NCBI GenBank assembly: GCA_053919585.1
Contig: CM132792.1
DNA from: Euprymna scolopes
Taxonomy: Eukaryota
Direction: 5' to 3' (one strand)
DNA length: 64,000 nt
Shown here: in pieces, positions 6,172 through 14,984 of the stretch
How positions within the stretch are numbered: position 1 is the first letter of the stretch
Layout: every line of letters starts with the position of its first letter
Notes under the pieces: generated by a model
Told to the model about the DNA's origin: nothing
The model's database searches: none
What the model saw: only the letters and a program-made list of their open reading frames with translations
Made by a program: the position numbers and the translations under genes

Positions 6172-9100
6172 AGATGTGGCATCCCCCAACAACGGATGTG
6201 GTGCCTCCCGGCCCCCCCGACACGGTCGCTACACCAGGAGCGTCCCCCATGGTGAAGAAGCAGAGGCCTGTTCCTGGTTGTTTTCATAACACTTCACGGT
6301 AAACAATATTCTTAGTATATGTTACACCATGCTTTCTGCCCTGATTATCATCTTTATGCTGTTACATTACCTTAAATTTCACACTGTGCTTAGATCGAGC
6401 TCTTGAACATGCCACATACAGTGTACCATGAGAAAATACAGGTTGTTGAACATATATACCAACCTTATCAAAAGTTTGGCCTTGTGCTTTATTGATGGTC
6501 AGTGAATATGCTAATCGTATTGAAAACTATCCGATGAAATGCAAACGGAACATTTGTATCACTTAGCTTTAACTTAATTCTTGGAATGATAACTGTGGAA
6601 CCTCTATTAGATCCATTAATTAAAATAGCAATGATGCTGTTTTGATGACATTCTTTTATTTTCATCCTAGTTCCATTACAAAGTCCTTGATTTATGGATA
6701 AATTTCACAGTAGCATTACTATTGCCCCTGTTTTCACATCAAGTCAGTGAGCATTCCAGACAGAGTTAATGAATTTATGAACTCGATAGGATAATTTTGA
6801 AGTTCAGCATCATCATTGGAGATGTAATCTGTACTTAAATATGTATTTATGCCTTCGGGAAGATTATTTAGAATTTCTTCATTTACTGTTAAACATTCTG
6901 TATTTTTGGAGTTATGATGATTCTATTTTCCATTTCTTGAGGGCTGCAATCAAATGTTTCTGAGATTAGAGAACCATTACATACCAAATCATCAGGAACA
7001 TCTATATCATCTACAGGAACGTCATTAAGACTGCTCATTAGTGTACTATTACCAAGATGAAGGAGCTATCTACAAAACTTGTGTTCATTTATGTTAGTTC
7101 TAACGTTTTGTGTTAGCTGTAATTGACTGAAATGATGCCCCAATGTGCAACTTTTAAGACAGGTGTCTATAATAGATGTAGGTGATCCATGTGGCACTAC
7201 TGGCAAAATTTGGCTGACGTCACCTCCAAGTATGAGAAATTTTCCACCAAATATTTTATCGTTACTCATATCTTGTAGACATCTATCTATAGCAAGCAGT
7301 GTATGATTAAGTATCATAAAAGCTTCGTCTATGATGAATACCTTTATCCTTCTCAAAAAAAGAAGCATGCTCTGATACAGGAGAAACGTTACAGACACTG
7401 GTTTCTGTCAGAGGTACAGGTAGTTTGAATATACTGTGGAGTGTTTTCTCTGAAGTTAGTAGCATAGCAGCAATGCCAGTCCATGCCGCAGTGGCGGTTA
7501 CAGTACTGCTGGAGGTGAAGTAATCATATAACATGTTGAATAACAAGGTTTTTCCTGATCCGGCTGGGGCATCTAAATAGAAGCAATTGTTGTTTTGGGC
7601 TTCTTTTTCAGTTGCCATGACAGCCTTGATGATAGTATTAAAGACCTCTAATTGTTCATTGTTTAGCAATTCAACATTAGACCGGTTTGTATTTCGAGTC
7701 ATATTATCTATTGAAGGATCACCTGTTGGTTCAGGTAAACTCATTGCCTGGCAAGAAGAACCATGCGCATTAAATATTGCTTTTATCAAATGAAGTGCAA
7801 TGTTTTCACATATACATTCATCATAAGCAGAAATGAGGTTTTCAATCATGCTCTGTTTATGGTTAATAAATAGTTGAAAGGCATCCACTGGATGATGATA
7901 GAGACAGCATTGCAAACATTCTACGTAGTTGTTGTGGCATTCTAAATGTAGCCGCTTCAGTAAGAACATTTTCTAATTCAGTATCATCTTGCAATAATCT
8001 AAGGCTGATGCAAGCTTCTCTAAATGTAGGGAATGTATGACTTTGGACTGTTCTCAAATCTTCAAATGACTTTGCTCCAAAGACATGAAGAAGCAGAATC
8101 CGTAGATAAAACTTTTCACCTTGGTTTGGTGAAACTGAATACATTCTTGTGATCAAATTACTTGACCGCTTTCTTTTAGTCCATTTTGTAGTAGTTTTGT
8201 TAAATACATAATGATGTGGAATATCACAGTAAAAATATTGGTTAGCAGTAATATCATTCTGATTTAGTTCAAACCAAGCAGTCAAATTTGTGTGACGTTG
8301 TGCTTGTTGAATTGCTTATTCAGCTTGATAATAAATCTGTTGCTATCCAGGCATGTGTACAGCTAAACAGTACACAACATGAGACTATCCATGCATTTTA
8401 TAGTCAGAAAGACGCCACATTGCTTCTGGAGGTGATACATATCTGCATGATAGATATTGCTTGACTTCATCTCTTTGTTCTGATCGCATTGTTTCTCCTT
8501 CATCGATATTAATAGATGAATCATGGTTATTAACCTCCATCATAGCACTATCATGTCCTTTATAAACATATTTAAATATGTATTTTATACTCTTGACTGA
8601 AGAGCAGATTTCTAAGTTAATATGAGCTCCAAAAAAAAAAAGATATTTTCTCAGAAGAAATTTGTTGAAAGGGACTATGTATCTATTATCAACAGTAAAA
8701 TTATCGACTTGAACTGAGTAACCATTATTTGCACGTTTGTAAGCCAGGTATCCATCAATGTTTTCTACTGTTTCTTCTCTAAATGCCTTTGGAAATTTCT
8801 TTTTGCATAATCCTTTACTCATACAAGGAGAATTAGTATTAACTGCACCACATGGGCCATGTAGCATTCAAGATTTAACTAAATCACGAAGCTCTGGATC
8901 TTCAGGTCCAGGTATTTCTGCTGACACAATTGCATCAATTTGTTGAACTGTTCTGATCTTATCCTGATCTCGCAGCATTATGATCATGTGGCAGTGTGGT
9001 AACCCTCTTTTGAAATTCAATAACATAAACATATGCAACAGGAGTTCCCAATACATGTCTGTCTTTAATGCCTTTCAAAAGTTCAGTTAGATGTGCATGA

Positions 9101-9761
9101 TACACACGTGATATTAAGTCAGGTCGATTTTGTGCAAGTTCTGATGACCCCAAGTTGTTTAATATTTTAGGACATCTTGGATTACATGTATAGGTAAGGA
9201 ATAGGTCTGCCTTTCCATATTTACAGAAAACTGCCATTGCATCTTGATACAGTTGTTGAAGATTCCTAGGACTTCCTGTAAATGAAGATGGTAGAATAAC
9301 TGGTACACCAGGATCGCCATCTTCATTCCTTGCTAAATGATCCATTAAGCCAGAATATTGAGCAGCTCTTAGTTGACTTTGATGGCTTTTAATGAAGTTC
9401 AATCTGCACCCTTCAACTTTCACATATGCATCAACGACATATTGTTGGAATAGTTTACCAGATCTATGGATAATACTGAATGAATCTCTAATTGCAAGGC
9501 GATAACTGTAATACTCTTGCATTGTCACTTTATTGCGAACTCTTGTTTGCTGTTCTGGCCTATGTTGTATGTTTATGTGCCAGCCTTGTTCACCATTTGG
9601 AAATAATATAGGATATATCATGGGGTCCAAGTGGCAAGACAGATAAGAAATTCGGTGTTTTGCACAGAAACTATTAGAGTAGAAAGCTTTCTGGCGGTTA
9701 GGGACCTCAACAGTGAAGGGGTGAGATTTTGTTGCTAAGCGGGTTTGTCGGGCATATGTAC

Positions 9762-9796
9762 CACAGTGGGCCCAGATGGCCAATGTTTGGAAATAG
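9762..9796 (+). repeat. Transib 3' TIR (outer, second family member)
   Basis: CACAGTGGGCCCAGA is a perfect 15-bp inverse of 13543-13557, followed by tggccaatgttt and GGAAATAG. Confidence 0.85.
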
Positions 9797-10242
9797 AGGT
9801 GAAGCATCATCACAAATGACTTTTATAAGATTTTTTTCAAAACTTTTGAGGCATATGATCAACTTGGGTTCATTTTAATTAGATTTTAACTGATATTTGT
9901 CTCTGAAAACAGTTCTGGGACCAAATTGACCTATTTTGGCTGTGTCACAAAATGTCGCGAATCTACCGAAATTTACTAAATTCAGAGAAATATTGAAATA
10001 GGCATTATTTCAGTTTGGATTGAGATAGGAAAGTGGTTGAGGGCTTGTTAGAAGCGTATGGCCAAGGAGAACATAATGGAAGCAATTCATGTTGAGCTAA
10101 TATACCAGTTTATGTATTGGCTTTTATAAAGTAATGAATCTGTCTGAAATTGTGTATTTCTGTTGAAAATTGCACAGGTAACAATACAAACATTATGTGT
10201 ATTATTGAATTTTCTCAAAACCTCACATAAAGATAATATAAA

Positions 10243-10320
10243 TTAATCAAGAAAAATGTCTTCAATAAGGCTTGCATACCAGTTCTTGGACAAGCCAAAC
10301 AACCGATTATGTGAACATAT
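10243..10320 (-). pseudogene. Diverged second copy of the Transib transposase C-terminus
   Basis: Minus-strand translation ICSHNRLFGLSKNWYASLIEDIFLD* versus IRSHGRLVGLPKRWYASLVEDIFLD* at the end of the main ORF. Confidence 0.85.
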
Positions 10321-10322
10321 GG

Positions 10323-10357
10323 CACACTGGCCCCAGATCGCCAAACTTTGGAAATAG
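10323..10357 (+). repeat. Transib 3' TIR (inner)
   Basis: cacactggccccagatcgccaaactttggaaatag aligns without gaps to the 9762 TIR. Confidence 0.75.
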
Positions 10358-10647
10358 AGATTAGGCGAAGTCTTACTTTGATTTTTCTGGCATTTTCTCG
10401 TTTTTTTTTGTTTTTCAGTTTTATACCCAAGTACAGAGTAACTAAAGCATATTTTGACTTAGAGAAAGTGTATAAAAGGATACAGGAACCAAAAATGCTT
10501 TGATTTTGTCTAAATTCACGAAATTAGGAGAAATTATAAAATTGGAGTAGTTTCGTTGACTCAACCGAGATAATTCAGTTTGTGTTATGTTTCTCATTCC
10601 ATACTGGCAGATAAGAATATAAAATAAAACAACAAATAAATCACCAT

Positions 10648-12798
10648 CTAGTCAAGAAAAATGTCTTCAACGAGGCTTGCATACCACCGCTTCGGTAGAC
10701 CTACCAACCGACCATGCGACCGAATGGTGTGATCGTCAGCTCCACATTCCGTGCAAAATTTTCTTGCCTGATCTGATCGTTCCAGTAACCTGGCCATTAC
10801 ATCAGTTAATTGGAGCAGTGGGTCAGTTTTCCTCGACAAGAACTGCAAGTAGTTGCGAATGTCTTTGTTGTTCGACTCTAAGCATTCCTCTGACAGACTT
10901 CCCAGTCCATGAGCATCATTTAGACTCATCAATTCTGTTGAATGATGAAGAGTCCCATGCAAGGTGTGATTCATCATGACCCATGGGAAGTTGTCACACA
11001 AATTGTATGAAGTCTGCTCACAAAGTTCTTTGAACTTCATCAGATCGATCTTACGTGACGACGACACAACCGATAGAACAGTGGAGAGCTGACGATGAAG
11101 GAGAAGCAGGTTTTCTCAGTGTTTTTCATCAACTAATTTTTCGATTGAAGCTAGAACTTCCTCTGAAAAGAAGCGACGGCCTTGTGGACCATTGGTTGAT
11201 GTCCCACCTTTTCCACCAGCAGAGTTGACTCTATCAAGATACAGGCCTGTCTCTGTGTAGATCGCTTTGAGAACTCGATCCTTCGCTCGACGGACAGGTT
11301 CACCACGAACGTCGGACCTCTCAATCCACTGTTGGTAGTCAGCATGGCACCGATACAAAACCTTCAGGAACCACATTGTTCCATTGATGTACGAATGAGT
11401 CACAGTGATGCTTGATTGGTCAGATGTTGTGAGTGGCTTCTTGGTTAATCCTTGACGAGTCTCAAAATCTCCTTGTTTTGCTTTGACTTTACCATTCTCA
11501 TCAACTAGTTCATTGTACAGCTCGAGAGAATTCTTTGCCGATCTGTTAATGGGAAAGCCCTCTGCAACCTTGGTTCTGTCAGTCCAATCAGCCTGTTTTG
11601 TTGTGCATAGGATGCAATCAGCCCCTCCCAACCCTGAAATGTCCCTTTTGAATTTCAGATCCTTCATTGAATCGTGTACTATGACATTCACATCATATCC
11701 TTGACCATCAGCAGTAACAAAAATTCCATCTGAAGCCAACTCTTGGCGTGCTTTGTCTGTAGTGGGAACGACCATATTAAGAAGATCTTCATCGGTCTCT
11801 TTCTCCCTGATCAAGAATAGTGGTCTTAATGTTCTACAGTTGTTTGGCGAGTGATTCTGCCACAGACAAAAAGAAGAACCGTCCTGGTAACGAGCAAGTA
11901 GTTTCAGTGGTGTAATGCCATACTGGAACATATTTTCAGTTGCGTCCAGCATACTTGTAGAGTTCCACACTACTTGTTGACCAGCATCGTCACATCCATC
12001 TTTAAACACCATTTCAAGGACACCATCTCTGCATTTATCTTTTATGATTTTCTTAGGGATCAAGGATATGATGGACTCGATCGTCATTTTCACTAGGTCC
12101 TTGTACTGCACCTGAACTCCACTGTCATCAAGAACTGGGGAGATACTGGGGCGGAGCTTTTTACGTCCCTCCAACAACTCATTGCTGGTTGGAAAATAGA
12201 TTCCCTTCGCAGCAAGTATGTGCCTCATCTTTCTCATTTGCTCCCTACTCAACGTTAATGAATGCATCAATGCAATCGCTTCATTGATCTCAAAGGAATG
12301 AATATCGTTCACATTGGACGAAAATATCTCATACCCAACTCGAGCTGTCTTCTTTTCCGATTGAATATTCACACGATGAATCATATATCCTAGCAACTGA
12401 GTGACTGAAAGCTCAGGACATTCCTTTGCAGCGTATTCTTCAATGTAGTCGAGCAGACCCTGTGTTCTTTCCTTCTGCATTCTCTCCCCTAAGTTGACAA
12501 AACTCTTCCTTTGCTTCTTTCCAACTTGTGGACAGTTCCCTTCCATTTCGATTTCTTCTTTCGATGCTTGAGCAAGGATTTCGGTGTTTGCTAGGCGTTT
12601 CTTTTTCAATCGTTTGAAATGGTTCCATGCATTCAAGAAGAAGCCACTGATTTCTTTGTTTTCGTGAAAACCATGAGTTTCTCTGAATTGGCGAAAGCAT
12701 TTGGCATATTCAGGTGGTTTGGTACGGCATAATGCAGCCTGACTAATGATGGCTTCGAAGACCTGATATTCTGTGGTGAGAACATTGTTGCCTGCCAT
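10648..12798 (-). pseudogene. Transib/RAG1-core-like DDE transposase, about 716 codons with one in-frame TGA at 11116-11118
   Basis: ORFs 11116-12798 and 10648-11067 are in frame (DEKH*ENLLLLHRQLSTVLSVVSSSRKID). Motifs KDGCDDAG, RPLFLIREKE, SMKDLKF, CILC, HSYIN, STNGPQGRRFF, HGTLHH and GSLSEECLESNNK match the order of the RAG1/Transib core (D600, E662, D708, C727/C730, H795, H937/H942, E962 in mouse RAG1 numbering). Confidence 0.9.
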
Positions 12799-13518
12799 CT
12801 GAATATGATAATTTCTTTTTTTTAAACTTCAGTTAACCCGATAATAACCTGTAATGAAGAAAAAAGCATAGACATTAACTGAATGGTCATATAGAATAAT
12901 AGAATACTCAAAATATTTGATAGAACATGTAAAAGCAAACTAAAACTTTGGCAAAATGCCCGAATTTGGTAATTTGGTCCCAGATCCCGGAAAAATGAAA
13001 ATTCTATTTGTCAGAAAAAAAATTTACTGCTAAGATTTACAAAACAAATTTGACATAGTTAGAAAGGTCTTAGGCTATATTTTTTGAAACATATATACTT
13101 TGATATGTAAATCTTAGCGGTTTTTGAGCTATTTGAGGAATTGAACAAAAAATAAATGACAATTTTGCTGAAACATTAAGGTAAAATTTCACTAAATAAG
13201 CTTTTATCTTATCAAAATTTCATCTATTATACCACAAACAAGACCTCTGTTAGAAAAAAAAGATGAATTTAGTTATACAAATTGAAAAAATAACATCAAA
13301 AAACCCATTATGGCATTTTATTTACAAATTCTGGCTTAGTTTATATGATAAGGTTCATATGTAGTCAAGAATATGATCTCGACACGATTTTGAATTTCCG
13401 CTAGGTTTGAGATAGCATAAAATCACTTCACGTGATGCTACAGACCTAATTTTTTTTTTTGTTTGTTCAGAAATTTTATTTACTTACAGAATTTCTATAG
13501 TTCAAGGTACATAAAGAA

Positions 13519-13557
13519 AGTTTTTTTTAGGCTATTTCCACCTCTGGGCCCACTGTG
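13519..13557 (-). repeat. Transib 5' TIR resembling a 23-RSS
   Basis: Minus strand reads CACAGTG ggcccagaggtggaaatagccta AAAAAAACT: exact heptamer, 23-nt spacer, 7/9 match to nonamer ACAAAAACC. Confidence 0.85.
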
Positions 13558-14984
13558 TTTTGGTTGAGAATGTGGGTAAACAATAATATCTCTGTTAGCA
13601 GATGGAGCACCATCCTCACCAACAAATACTACATCTATTTCGTTGTTTATTGGATTGTTAAATCTTTTGATATCTGGACCAGCGGTGAAATGCATCAAAA
13701 CTCTCCTTGGCTTTACATTTTCCCTTATAGCACGTGCTTCCTCTTCTAATTCAATGGCCCTCATATTTTTATAAGCTTGGGCATAAGGATTATTCTCCAT
13801 AACTGTAGCTATGGTTTCAAAGACACTTTAGATACATTTATTATTTTCTGGTAAATTACACCGGAGTTGATTTGCTTCAGATAAGTCCAAGATGTAAATC
13901 TGTCCATATTTTCTCTCTTTTTCATTATTTGGGTGCAGAGTACTGGAATAATGATAGGTTTGACCTTGTAAGCAAAAACAATAGGGGCCTCTTCCAGGAG
14001 GGCGGACATTATTTGCTCCAAATGATGCAAATGAAAGTGAATTGCGTATATTAGATCTGAAATTAAACGCTTCTTTGTCATTACCTTTGAGTAACCTTTG
14101 GAGTTGAGGATAATCTTGTAAGGGAGGAAGAGAAACTTTTCGTTTTTGACAACAATTCGATGCTTCTCCTCGAAATCTAAGTGCTCTACAAAATGAGCAA
14201 ATCAAACTCACGTCACCTACAAAATAATATGGGATATTTTGTCTTTCTGCTTCATTCATATTGTTTTTTCGTTCCCGTTGCCTAGTTCTTTCATTTTGCA
14301 GATAAAGTTGTCTGTCTTCAATCGTGTTATTTATTTGCTGTCTCAATATGTTTCTCCTTTGCAATCTGATATTATCCCTTTCTTCAGTTCGTAGCTGCTG
14401 ACGCCTTTGTCTTTGTCGTTCTCTTGTATCTTCCAATGTAGTGCTAGTGATTTGGTTCATTCTGTGTGAAAATTTAACTGGGCTTAATAAAAAAAAATTA
14501 TAAATAAAGATTTTGATACGAAAAATAAATGTTTCTATAAGGAAATAAAATTCAATATAAATGTTTTAAATGAGAATAAATATTTCTTAATGAAACCGTT
14601 TTTTATATTAAAAATCATTAGTGTGTAATTTTTCTAAGAGAGAATTTAAATCAATATTTTTATAATTTAGCTCTGTAAAAAGGATATCTAGGTGAATTAT
14701 ATAATAATAAATTATTTCCTCTCATAACATTTATTGGTGCTTCTACACTTTGTCGCCAAAAAAAAGGATGCCATGTTTTTCAGCGCACCTGCTGCCAGAA
14801 TCCAAGAATGACATTAGTATTTTAAACTGTAGAAACTATTTTATTTATTCAATAAATATATTGAAGTGAAAGTGTAGAAGAACCTATTTTTTGCTTTGAT
14901 TAAAGAACTGTACACGCTTTCCAGTTATTTCATGATTTCGTCTAAATCATGTTCAAGCTTGATTGAGTTCCTATGATCTTAATG

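What the first reader, a model, noticed from the sequence alone, without database searches (positions are those of the whole stretch)
10648..12798. RAG2-less transposase mixing Transib core motifs with a RAG1-like nonamer-binding segment
Seen: KQRKSFVNLGERMQKERTQGLLDYIEEYAAKEC..EAIALMHSLTLSREQMRKMRHIL..IYFPTSNELLEGRKKLRP (about 12148-12516). From my recollection of RAG1 it aligns in register with the NBD/DDBD ([69 protein letters not shown]). The core (GTSTNGPQGRRFF, VSSSRKID, RLLERSD) is Transib-type. There is no RING/ZnA region and no room for a RAG2L gene between the TIRs. Inference: possibly a lineage intermediate between Transib and RAG1L/ProtoRAG, nearly intact.
Basis: partly seen in the sequence, partly recalled or inferred. 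Interest (0 to 1): 0.88.

Follow-up and report, generated by a model that had tools for sequence, protein, structure and literature searches.

The report
Mollusc Transib transposon with RAG1-like NBD
This is a slightly damaged copy of a young, single-gene Transib jumping gene in a mollusc-type genome whose enzyme does carry a RAG1-like DNA-reading N-terminal segment, but that segment is common to many Transibs and this "intermediate" type was described in 2022, so it is a new member of a known kind.

Summary
On the minus strand, 12798-10648 encodes a 716-codon RAG1-like DDE transposase with one in-frame stop (11116-11118). The quoted motifs lie exactly at 12148-12516.

The element is 9762-13557. 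It has CACAGTG ends, a 5-bp TTTTG target duplication, no second gene, and sits inside a Helitron.

The RAG1-NBD resemblance is real. A profile of the N-terminal segment alone hits RAG1 NBD+DDBD (E 5e-8) and the isolated NBD crystal chain 3GNA (E 1.8e-4). A confident model of the window's residues 88-235 superposes on 3GNA (2.5 Å over 62 columns).

It is not a special mosaic. The same segment occurs across Transibs, including a moth relative of HzTransib. HzTransib itself lacks it.

The family also has the ZnC2 extension (α11-α12), a CxxC…H…H tail and asymmetric ends (9-bp offset). Together these define the "Subgroup I Transibs" that Tao et al. 2022 already called intermediates between Transib and RAG1L.

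Contigs from other sequencing runs carry a near-identical copy without the stop or the deletion.

The scan also noted a similar "mosaic" Transib elsewhere in this genome.

Verdict: new member of a known kind; interest modest.

The parts
9762..13557 (-). Whole mobile unit (3,796 bp): a Transib-superfamily DNA transposon with a single transposase gene
   Evidence: Perfect 15-nt terminal inverted repeat CACAGTGGGCCCAGA at both ends. Contigs from three other runs align across it and stop exactly at 9762 and 13557 (table 8).
10648..12798 (-). Transposase reading frame, 716 codons including one internal TGA at 11116-11118
   Evidence: Pfam RAG1 E 2.8e-9. tblastn of the intact relative P0001 covers residues 1-728 at 88% identity.
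11116..11118 (-). In-frame stop (TGA). Contigs from other runs read CGA (Arg) here, at a CpG.
   Evidence: (11118 A>G in X1, X7, X8).
10769..10770 (-). Site of a 30-nt in-frame deletion in the window copy, removing 10 codons after RLLERSD
   Evidence: table 4: 30 nt 'put in behind 10769' in all three contig runs. The P0001 alignment agrees.
12304..12516 (-). NBD-like segment (residues about 95-165): basic KKQRK stretch followed by three helices
   Evidence: Profile A4 hits RAG1 at 5e-8 and 3GNA at 1.8e-4. Model of residues 88-235 has pLDDT 90. Top Foldseek hits are RAG1 chains with NBD; 3GNA gives TM 0.70 and 2.5 Å. VIA-align keeps a constant register offset of 293 to mouse RAG1.
12103..12303 (-). 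DDBD-like segment (residues about 166-232), shared with all Transibs including HzTransib
   Evidence: HzTransib residues 5-60 align here, and RAG1 DDBD aligns continuously with it.
11398..11577 (-). ZnC2 extension equivalent to RAG1 α11-α12 (residues about 408-467). Present here and in RAG1/RAG1L, missing in HzTransib.
   Evidence: The profile-to-HzTransib alignment breaks between profile positions 407 and 466 (HzTransib 237-257), but is continuous against RAG1 and BbeRAG1L. Occupancy table.
11980..12003 (-). KDGCDDAG motif with the first catalytic Asp (D270, equivalent to RAG1 D600). D271 is a private G-to-D change in this copy.
11647..11673 (-). DSMKDLKFK motif with the second catalytic Asp (D380, equivalent to RAG1 D708)
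   Evidence: Invariant column; alignment to RAG1; coordinates.
10864..10896 (-). LSEECLESNNK motif with the catalytic Glu (E638, equivalent to RAG1 E962)
10714..10755 (-). C-terminal zinc-knuckle-like tail CTECGADDHTIRSH (CxxC-x4-H-x4-H), a variant of the CCGHC/CTT1 motif of RAG1L and Subgroup I Transibs
   Evidence: canonical Cx2Cx3GHx4C in many related Transibs, and the CCHH variant throughout this family. The AFDB BbeRAG1L model aligns up to query residue 706.
13532..13557 (-). 5' TIR, short form: CACAGTG + 10 nt + TGGAAATAG
   Evidence: The same layout occurs in the intact relative L002.
9762..9796 (+). 3' TIR, long form: CACAGTG + 19 nt + TGGAAATAG, a 9-bp longer spacing than the 5' TIR
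   Evidence: The same layout occurs in L002.
10323..10357 (+). Second, internal 3'-type TIR (CACACTGGCCCCAGATCGCCAAACTTTGGAAATAG)
10246..10322 (-). Relic of a related transposase's last 26 codons, part of a stacked extra 3' end spanning 9762-10322
   Evidence: DNA alignment; tblastn 703-728, 65% identity.
9658..9662 (.). Left copy of the 5-bp target-site duplication TTTTG, separated from the TIR by a 99-bp high-copy repeat fragment (9663-9761) in this haplotype
   Evidence: An X7 contig joins 9662 directly to 9762, and an empty-site contig joins 9654 to 13555 (table 5).
13558..13562 (.). Right copy of the target-site duplication TTTTG
   Evidence: Removing 9663-13562 restores the Helitron reading frame ...SQPKHRISYLS....

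Best explanation
This is a recently inserted, lightly decayed copy of an autonomous Transib-superfamily DNA transposon of the Subgroup I type defined by Tao et al. 2022. It has a single gene and no RAG2-like partner.

Its transposase is a RAG1-core homologue with this domain order: a family-specific helical N-terminus, an NBD-like segment, DDBD, PreR, an RNase H fold with a DDE triad, ZnC2 with the α11-α12 extension, ZnH2, CTD and a CxxC...H...H zinc-knuckle tail.

Inferred mechanism, by homology with RAG, BbeRAGL and HzTransib. A transposase dimer pairs one short-spacer and one long-spacer TIR. The heptamer CACAGTG is nicked and the flank is hairpinned by the DDE site. The adjacent conserved GGCCCAGA is probably held by the C-terminal zinc knuckle. 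The distal TGGAAATAG box, at 10- versus 19-nt spacing, is probably read by the hinged NBD-like dimer. Integration makes a 5-bp duplication.

Shown here: the homology, the domain content, the TIR layout, the TSD, the empty site, and the existence of intact near-identical copies. Inferred: catalysis and which domain reads which TIR element.
For: Protein identity. Pfam RAG1 matches at E 2.8e-9. The family profile scores HzTransib at 3e-58, BbeRAG1L at 7.7e-42 and RAG1 at 5e-27. The AF2 model has pLDDT 86. VIA-align gives Z 31.1 to HzTransib (24% identity), Z 30.6 to RAG1 with NBD (model 91-690 = mouse 385-1007) and Z 28.4 to BbeRAGL.

NBD. The N-terminal-only profile scores RAG1 at 5e-8, 3GNA at 1.8e-4 and BbeRAG1L at 3.5e-6. 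The domain model has pLDDT 90, and Foldseek's top 28 hits are RAG1 chains with NBD.

Subgroup I features. The α11-α12 extension is present. The zinc-knuckle tail is present. Asymmetric TIRs are conserved in a 62%-identical intact relative, L002.

Transposon hallmarks. 15/15 TIRs, TTTTG TSD, and empty-site and direct-junction contigs. Neither this copy nor L002 has a second ORF.

Family context. 5,639 representative proteins match at E<1e-3. The window's family is one well-supported clade (SH-aLRT 100) inside the α11-α12-positive radiation.

Literature: PMC9435367, PMC1131882, PMC10462144.
Against: No named Subgroup I, RAG1L or RAG1 sequence could be placed in my tree, so the Subgroup I assignment rests on the three diagnostic features, not on phylogeny.

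The GRP(R/K) motif of the RAG1 NBD is replaced by KKQRK in this family. The distal TIR box is not A-rich like an RSS nonamer.

The tail is CCHH rather than the canonical CCGHC.

The TSD is not directly adjacent to the left TIR in this haplotype; 99 bp intervene.

No transcription was seen in a polyA RNA run: zero depth over the gene (X21).

No activity data exist.
Confidence: 0.85

Rival explanations
1. It is a RAGL (ProtoRAG-type) transposon that secondarily lost RAG2L and the N-terminal zinc domains. On this reading it is a RAG1L derivative, not a Transib.
For: With the single window sequence, the N-terminal 560 aa hit BbeRAG1L (4.7e-8) and RAG1 (2.3e-6) but not HzTransib. It shares α11-α12, a CTT-type zinc knuckle and an NBD-like segment with RAG1L. 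Martin et al. 2020 (PMC7204232) raise the scenario that Transib arose by loss of RAG2L.
Against: With a family profile, HzTransib is the best PDB match (201 bits against 147 for BbeRAG1L and 98 for RAG1). Structure-based identity is 24% to HzTransib but 19% to RAG1/RAG1L, below the level Martin et al. 2020 use to separate Transib from RAG1L. There is no RING/ZDD. Dozens of related lineages and an intact 4.45-kb relative are all single-gene.
Confidence: 0.06
2. It is a distinct, undescribed lineage lying closer to RAG1L than any published Subgroup I Transib.
For: The family-specific combination (KKxRK basic patch, CCHH knuckle, conserved about 90-aa helical N-terminus) was not found verbatim in the Tao et al. 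supplement. The family is mostly known only from unannotated marine metagenome and assembly contigs.
Against: All its RAG1L-like characters are the ones already listed for Subgroup I (PMC9435367). In my tree it is one clade among several α11-α12-positive, CCGHC-bearing lineages, and others carry a more RAG1-like GRP/GRPRK motif than it does.
Confidence: 0.06
3. It is a domesticated host gene or a dead fossil, not part of a mobile family.
For: The window copy has a stop, a deletion and a G-to-D change beside the catalytic Asp. No polyA RNA reads map to it.
Against: The TIRs are intact and a TSD is present. Empty-site and alternative-junction contigs exist. Near-identical contigs (6 substitutions over 3.8 kb) that lack the stop and the deletion are assembled at high word depth even from low-volume DNA runs. 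This indicates multiple young copies.
Confidence: 0.03

Closest known systems
Subgroup I Transib transposons (Tao et al. 2022, Natl Sci Rev, PMC9435367; examples from Mnemiopsis, Pleurobrachia, Hydra Transib-9 and bacteria)
   Same: Single-gene element without RAG2L. Asymmetric TIRs. The α11-α12 region is retained in the zinc-binding domain. CTT1-type C-terminal zinc motif. NBD-equivalent N-terminal segment. Heptamer-like CAC... ends and a 5-bp TSD.
   Different: The host is a mollusc-type genome. The family has KKxRK in place of GRP. The knuckle ends in His (CCHH) rather than Cys. Spacers are 10/19 nt around a TGGAAATAG box. Phylogenetic placement among the named members was not tested.
HzTransib (Helicoverpa zea; PDB 6pqn, 6pqx and related; Subgroup II)
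   Same: Best sequence-profile and structural match for the catalytic core from DDBD to C-terminus (3e-58; Z 31.1, 2.8 Å over 470 residues). DDE triad. No RAG2 partner.
   Different: HzTransib starts at the DDBD, so it has no NBD-like segment and no N-terminal domain. It lacks about 40 residues of the α11-α12 region and has no CxxC...H knuckle.
BbeRAG1L of amphioxus ProtoRAG (PDB 6b40; AFDB A0A185KID9) and other RAG1L-B
   Same: NBD*-DDBD-core-CTT* order. α11-α12 present. CTT zinc knuckle. The structural alignment spans query 91-706. The TIR has a conserved block next to the heptamer.
   Different: RAG1L works with RAG2L and carries N-terminal zinc and RING domains. This element has neither. 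Structure-based identity is only about 19%.
Vertebrate RAG1 core (PDB 3gna for the NBD; 3jbw, 5zdz and others)
   Same: The NBD-like three-helix segment aligns in the same register (K98/R100, R109, K112, R114 of P0001 against mouse R391/R393, R402, K405, R407). DDBD, DDE core and ZnC2/ZnH2 are shared. The heptamer CACAGTG is identical to the RSS heptamer. Signal ends have spacer asymmetry.
   Different: No GRPR motif, no RAG2, no acidic CTT. The spacing difference is 9 bp rather than 11 bp. The distal box is not an A-tract nonamer. This is a mobile element, not a domesticated recombinase.
PflRAG1L-A (Martin et al. 2023, PMC10462144)
   Same: Carries both an NBD and a CTT zinc knuckle, together with asymmetric TIRs. 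This suggests two possibly redundant DNA-binding modes.
   Different: PflRAGL-A has RAG2L, an NBD with GRPR/K and an A/T-rich nonamer-like box. It belongs to the RAG1 clan.

Membership tests
Transib superfamily | RAG1-core-like DDE transposase with conserved D, D, E | tested here: met
   Pfam RAG1 E 2.8e-9. HzTransib 3e-58. Z 31.1. D270, D380 and E638 lie in invariant family columns aligned to RAG1 D600, D708 and E962.
Transib superfamily | TIRs beginning with an RSS-heptamer-like CAC(A/T)GTG | tested here: met
   CACAGTGGGCCCAGA at 9762 and 13557, a 15/15 match. CACTGTG/CACAGTG in L002.
Transib superfamily | 5-bp target-site duplication | tested here: met
   TTTTG at 9658-9662 and 13558-13562. 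The Helitron frame is restored on excision. A contig joins 9662 directly to 9762, and an empty-site contig exists. In this haplotype a 99-bp repeat fragment separates the left TSD from the TIR.
Transib superfamily | Single transposase gene, no RAG2-like gene | tested here: met
   No other ORF of at least 80 aa in 9762-13557 or in the 4.45-kb intact relative L002.
Subgroup I Transib (Tao et al. 2022) | Asymmetric 5'/3' TIRs | tested here: met
   The TGGAAATAG box starts at position 18 in the 5' TIR and position 27 in the 3' TIR. The same 9-bp offset is seen in L002.
Subgroup I Transib (Tao et al. 2022) | [quoted passage not shown] | tested here: met
   Alignment to RAG1 and RAG1L is continuous here, while there is a gap of about 40 residues against HzTransib. 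51 of 51 profile positions are occupied.
Subgroup I Transib (Tao et al. 2022) | CTT1 (CTT*/CCGHC-type) C-terminal tail | tested here: met
   CTECGADDHTIRSH at 10714-10755. Close family members P0053 and P0061 have the canonical Cx2Cx3GHx4C. This copy has a variant ending in His.
Subgroup I Transib (Tao et al. 2022) | Groups with named Subgroup I members in a phylogeny rooted on bacterial Transibs | not tested
   The reference sequences exist only as text in the paper's supplement and could not be brought into the scripts. A scan of bacterial genomes found no relative. My tree holds only unnamed representatives.
RAGL transposon / RAG1L | Convergent RAG2L (kelch, with or without PHD) gene inside the TIRs | tested here: not met
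RAGL transposon / RAG1L | N-terminal non-core region (C1-C3 zinc motifs, RING/ZDD) | tested here: not met
   No Pfam zinc or RING hit in the window protein or in 7 relatives. No conserved Cys/His in the first 100 alignment columns.
RAGL transposon / RAG1L | Core identity to RAG1/RAG1L above the Transib level (Transibs <22%, Martin et al. 2020) | tested here: not met
   Structure-based identity is 17-22% to RAG1 and 19% to BbeRAG1L, against 24% to HzTransib.
RAG1-type nonamer-binding domain (NBD with GRPR/K) | Three-helix NBD fold N-terminal to the DDBD, homologous in sequence | tested here: met
   3GNA at E 1.8e-4 and RAG1 at 5e-8 with the N-terminal profile. 3GNA gives TM 0.70 and 2.5 Å over 62 columns. 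HMMER and VIA-align give the same register.
RAG1-type nonamer-binding domain (NBD with GRPR/K) | GRPR/K AT-hook-like motif | tested here: not met
   The window has GKKQRK, and the family consensus is KKxRK. GRP or GRPRK is present in other Transib lineages such as P0115, P0169, P0176 and P0196.
RAG1-type nonamer-binding domain (NBD with GRPR/K) | Binds a distal nonamer and enforces spacer asymmetry | not testable with these tools
   Only the conserved distal box and the 9-bp asymmetry are seen. Binding needs biochemistry.

The most novel reading that the evidence does not exclude
The intact, near-identical copies seen in other individuals may form a currently active Subgroup I Transib in a mollusc. 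It would use both an NBD-like hinged dimer, reading a distal TGGAAATAG box at 10/19-nt spacing, and a CTT zinc knuckle. That would make it a natural, experimentally tractable stand-in for the RAG2-independent ancestor (pre-RAGL0) postulated by Tao 2022 and Martin 2023. No Subgroup I enzyme was found among solved structures in my PDB searches.
Probability: 0.3. Interest if true: 0.55.

Novelty: new member of a known kind. Interest (0 to 1): 0.3.

Why it matters
The origin of V(D)J recombination is usually traced as Transib, then the RAGL transposon, then RAG. The steps before RAG2 was acquired are known only from sequence comparisons. The only Transib enzyme with a solved structure (HzTransib) is of the derived Subgroup II type. 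It lacks the NBD, the RAG2-contact region and the CTT zinc knuckle.

This locus adds a young, apparently still intact Subgroup I family from a mollusc-type genome. One large survey found a single Transib across bivalves (PMC10294476). The family has clean asymmetric TIRs, a TSD and an empty site. That makes it a practical candidate for testing three questions:
- whether an NBD-like domain already read a distal TIR box;
- whether it already enforced end asymmetry without RAG2;
- whether NBD and CTT binding modes are redundant.

It does not change the current evolutionary model. It fits it.

Tried and rejected
1. Scan of 185,579 bacterial and archaeal genomes for relatives, to root a tree. Ten pattern matches, none confirmed.

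2. Contig L001, which encodes the 88%-identical intact protein. It has no recognisable TIR and diverges from the window beyond the 3' UTR, so it was useless for end analysis. L003 gave no TIR pair either.

3. Exact-motif search of the Tao et al. supplement for this family's peptides. No hits. Only general architecture could be compared by eye with two ctenophore Transibs.

4. Placing RAG1, RAG1L and named Transibs in the ML tree. No tool returned them as usable sequence ids, and I did not type long sequences. The tree is therefore rooted arbitrarily on the α11-α12-less group and says nothing about the relation to RAG1L.

5. Expression. PolyA RNA raw reads (X21) give zero depth on the gene. The 'metatranscriptome' contigs (X8) end exactly at the TIRs and look like DNA carry-over, so transcription is not shown.

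6. The Liu et al. 2019 HzTransib paper is not held. HzTransib's lack of an NBD is taken from my own alignments.

7. Considered and rejected: that the NBD similarity is chance (E-values), and that the 99 bp at 9663-9761 is necessarily flank captured through a cryptic end. It is a fragment of a repeat with word depth about 2,000 times that of the element, and one contig lacks it.
Full report
**What is in the sequence**

On the minus strand a single reading frame runs from the ATG at 12798 to the stop at 10648-10650. It is interrupted once by TGA at 11116-11118.

A script places them at the stated coordinates: KQRKSF at 12499-12516, RKKLRP at 12148-12165, GTSTNGPQGRRFF at 11167-11205, VSSSRKID at 11044-11067 and RLLERSD at 10771-10791. 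Pfam's RAG1 recombinase model matches residues 241-481 (E 2.8e-9, above its gathering score). No zinc, RING or other N-terminal RAG1 domain is detected.

**The element and its insertion**

The gene lies in a 3,796-bp unit, 9762-13557, bounded by a perfect 15-nt inverted repeat, CACAGTGGGCCCAGA. Its first seven bases equal the RSS heptamer.

Both ends carry a second conserved box, TGGAAATAG. It starts at position 18 of the gene-proximal 5' end and at position 27 of the 3' end, a 9-bp asymmetry.

The element interrupts a Helitron protein-coding frame. TTTTG occurs at 13558-13562 and at 9658-9662. Removing 9663-13562 restores ...SQPKHRISYLS....

In this haplotype 99 bp (9663-9761) separate the left TTTTG from the TIR. 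Laying public contigs on the region shows three things about this stretch:
- it is a fragment of a repeat with word depth about three orders of magnitude above the element's;
- one contig joins 9662 directly to 9762;
- an empty-site contig joins 9654 to 13555.

So the insertion is a normal Transib-type event with a 5-bp duplication.

Inside the unit, 9762-10322 is a stacked extra 3' end. It comprises a TIR, a UTR and the last 26 codons of a related transposase. A second 3'-type TIR follows at 10323. Contigs from other runs stop exactly at 9762 and 13557, so the composite is the repeated unit.

Nothing of RAG2L size is encoded.

**State of the copy**

The closest database protein, P0001, is 728 aa, intact and 88% identical.

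Contigs from two DNA runs and one RNA-library run of the host carry an element differing from the window at only six substitutions over the 3.8 kb, plus small indels. In these contigs the stop codon reads CGA (Arg), 30 extra nucleotides fill a 10-codon gap after RLLERSD, and residues 271, 475 and 511 read G, T and E.

The window copy is therefore a decaying member of a very young family whose majority form is intact. It carries a stop, a 10-codon deletion, G271D beside the first catalytic Asp, T475M and E511K. Two of the four coding substitutions are at CpG.

PolyA RNA reads gave no coverage, so expression is not shown.

**Is the N-terminal segment RAG1-NBD-like?**

Yes, on four lines of evidence.

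1. With the single sequence, HMMER already paired GKKQRKSFVNLGERMQKERTQ with the zebrafish RAG1 stretch [21 protein letters not shown], but at only 2 bits.

2. A profile of the N-terminal segment alone gave significant hits. I built it from 54 Transib segments with the window's residues 88-235 first (alignment A4). Results:
   - RAG1 over NBD plus DDBD: E 5e-8;
   - the isolated NBD crystal chain 3GNA: E 1.8e-4;
   - BbeRAG1L: E 3.5e-6;
   - HzTransib: E 2.5e-8, but only for the DDBD part (its residues 5-60).

3. An AlphaFold model of the window's residues 88-235 is confident (pLDDT 90). Its 28 best Foldseek matches are all RAG1 chains that include the NBD. It superposes on 3GNA at 2.5 Å over 62 columns (TM 0.70 by target).

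4. The full-length model of P0001 (pLDDT 86) aligns to NBD-containing RAG1 chains from residue about 91-100 onward with a constant offset of 293 to mouse numbering. This is the same register as HMMER's. It places K98/R100, R109, K112 and R114 of P0001 opposite mouse R391/R393, R402, K405 and R407. The mouse numbering comes from my knowledge of the NBD literature.

The GRP(R/K) motif itself is not present in this family.

**Is that unusual for a Transib?**

No.

An exhaustive profile search finds 5,639 representative proteins at E<1e-3. I aligned 43 long representatives to the family model. The motif (GRP)-x-K-x-F-x-D-L-x2-R-x-K-R-x-R-T and the following helices appear in lineages of both structural types. 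Several carry a literal GRP, and one (P0115) carries GRPRK. One of the α11-α12-less, HzTransib-like proteins that has the segment is from Manduca sexta. HzTransib is simply a short form that begins at the DDBD.

The literature already says this:
- Kapitonov & Jurka 2005 reported that the terminal motifs of the RAG1 nonamer-binding region are conserved in Transib transposases, and that some families have 12/23-like ends (PMC1131882).
- Tao et al. 2022 found an NBD equivalent in both Transib subgroups (PMC9435367).
- Martin et al. [quoted passage not shown]

**What kind of Transib is it?**

The family profile scores HzTransib best (201 bits, 3e-58), then BbeRAG1L (147 bits), then RAG1 (about 98 bits). 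Structure-based identity is 24% to HzTransib against about 19% to RAG1/RAG1L.

Three features differ from HzTransib and agree with RAG1/RAG1L:
- About 40 extra residues lie between the CxxC of ZnC2 and the ZnH2 helix. They align continuously with RAG1 α11-α12, the RAG2-contact region.
- The C-terminal CxxC-x4-H-x4-H knuckle is the canonical Cx2Cx3GHx4C in close relatives.
- The TIRs are asymmetric. The asymmetry is conserved in a 62%-identical, intact, 4,452-bp single-gene relative from a Tara Oceans metagenome (L002).

These three features are exactly the diagnostic characters of the Subgroup I Transibs of Tao et al. 2022. [quoted passage not shown]

I built a maximum-likelihood tree of 77 representatives, excluding the α11-α12 columns. 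The nine α11-α12-less proteins form one clade. The window's family is one well-supported clade (SH-aLRT 100) among several α11-α12-positive, knuckle-bearing lineages.

I could not include named RAG1, RAG1L or published Subgroup I sequences. The assignment therefore rests on features, not topology.

**Mechanism**

Shown:
- homology of every RAG1-core subdomain;
- an intact DDE triad in this copy (D270, D380, E638);
- RSS-like heptamer ends and two conserved TIR blocks at unequal spacing;
- a 5-bp TSD and an empty site;
- absence of a RAG2-like partner.

Inferred by analogy with RAG, BbeRAGL and HzTransib:
- a dimer synapses one short and one long end, nicks at the heptamer and hairpins the flank;
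- it integrates with a 5-bp stagger;
- the CTT knuckle clamps the heptamer-adjacent GGCCCAGA block, as CTT* clamps TR2 in BbeRAGL;
- the hinged NBD-like dimer reads the distal box, so the 9-bp offset plays the role of the 12/23 difference.

The last two assignments are untested.

**Verdict**

The interpretation as a new intermediate is only partly supported. The element is a member of an already described class, and the 'RAG1-like' segment is an ancestral Transib character, not a mosaic.

What is modestly new:
- the host: a mollusc-type genome, where one bivalve-wide survey found a single Transib (PMC10294476);
- the family-specific variants (KKxRK basic patch, CCHH knuckle, 10/19 spacing);
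- evidence for intact, very young copies, which would suit biochemical study.

Another note of this scan describes a similar 'mosaic' Transib elsewhere in the same genome.

Noticed in passing
window 9663-9761: A 99-bp piece between the left TSD and the TIR belongs to an extremely abundant repeat. Its word depth is about 90,000 against about 47 for the Transib in run X1. Reads run on into other sequence at both sides. One X7 contig lacks the piece and joins TTTTG directly to CACAGTG, with CACAG repeated at both borders. It may be a later insertion or filler rather than flank captured through a cryptic end.
   Followed up: partly
window 9762-10357: Stacked extra 3' end: TIR, about 480 bp of UTR and the last 26 codons of a related (65-80% identical) Transib, followed by a second 3'-type TIR at 10323. 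Contigs from other runs show this composite is the repeated unit, so the family propagates with two nested 3' ends.
   Followed up: partly
window 8959-9662 and 13558-14460 (minus strand): The host of the insertion is a Helitron Rep/helicase-type ORF. Its frame (...IIVYPHSQPK|HRISYLSCHLDPMIYPILFP...) is exactly restored when the Transib plus one TSD copy is removed. Empty-site copies exist in other runs.
   Followed up: partly
window 10648-12798: Runs labelled as six different coded organisms (A-F), plus 'mollusc metagenome' and 'invertebrate metagenome' RNA libraries, hold about 90% of the sampled 31-mers of this gene. Either these are close congeners or the same species under several labels, or the element has spread horizontally very recently.
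   Followed up: no
window 12535-12798 (residues 1-88): A conserved, confidently modelled helical N-terminal domain of about 90 aa precedes the NBD-like segment (pLDDT 74-93). It has no Pfam match, no conserved Cys/His, and no counterpart in the RAG1 core or HzTransib. Its function is unknown.
   Followed up: no
window 11118, 11268, 11375, 11987, 12847, 13514: All six substitutions that distinguish the window copy from the majority contigs are G-to-A or C-to-T in the window copy. The four coding ones are all non-synonymous and move away from the family consensus, and two are at CpG. This fits deamination decay of a silenced copy.
   Followed up: partly
L001 288-1282 versus window 12813-12971: The 88%-identical relative from a metagenome contig has about 1 kb between the conserved 5'-UTR block and the start codon, where the window has about 160 bp. 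This is an indel of about 840 bp in the 5' non-coding part of the family.
   Followed up: no
L002 108-112 and 4565-4569: In the intact Tara Oceans relative the 5-bp flanks are AGGCA and TAGCA (3 of 5 identical), so the TSD there is imperfect or the exact end is offset.
   Followed up: no
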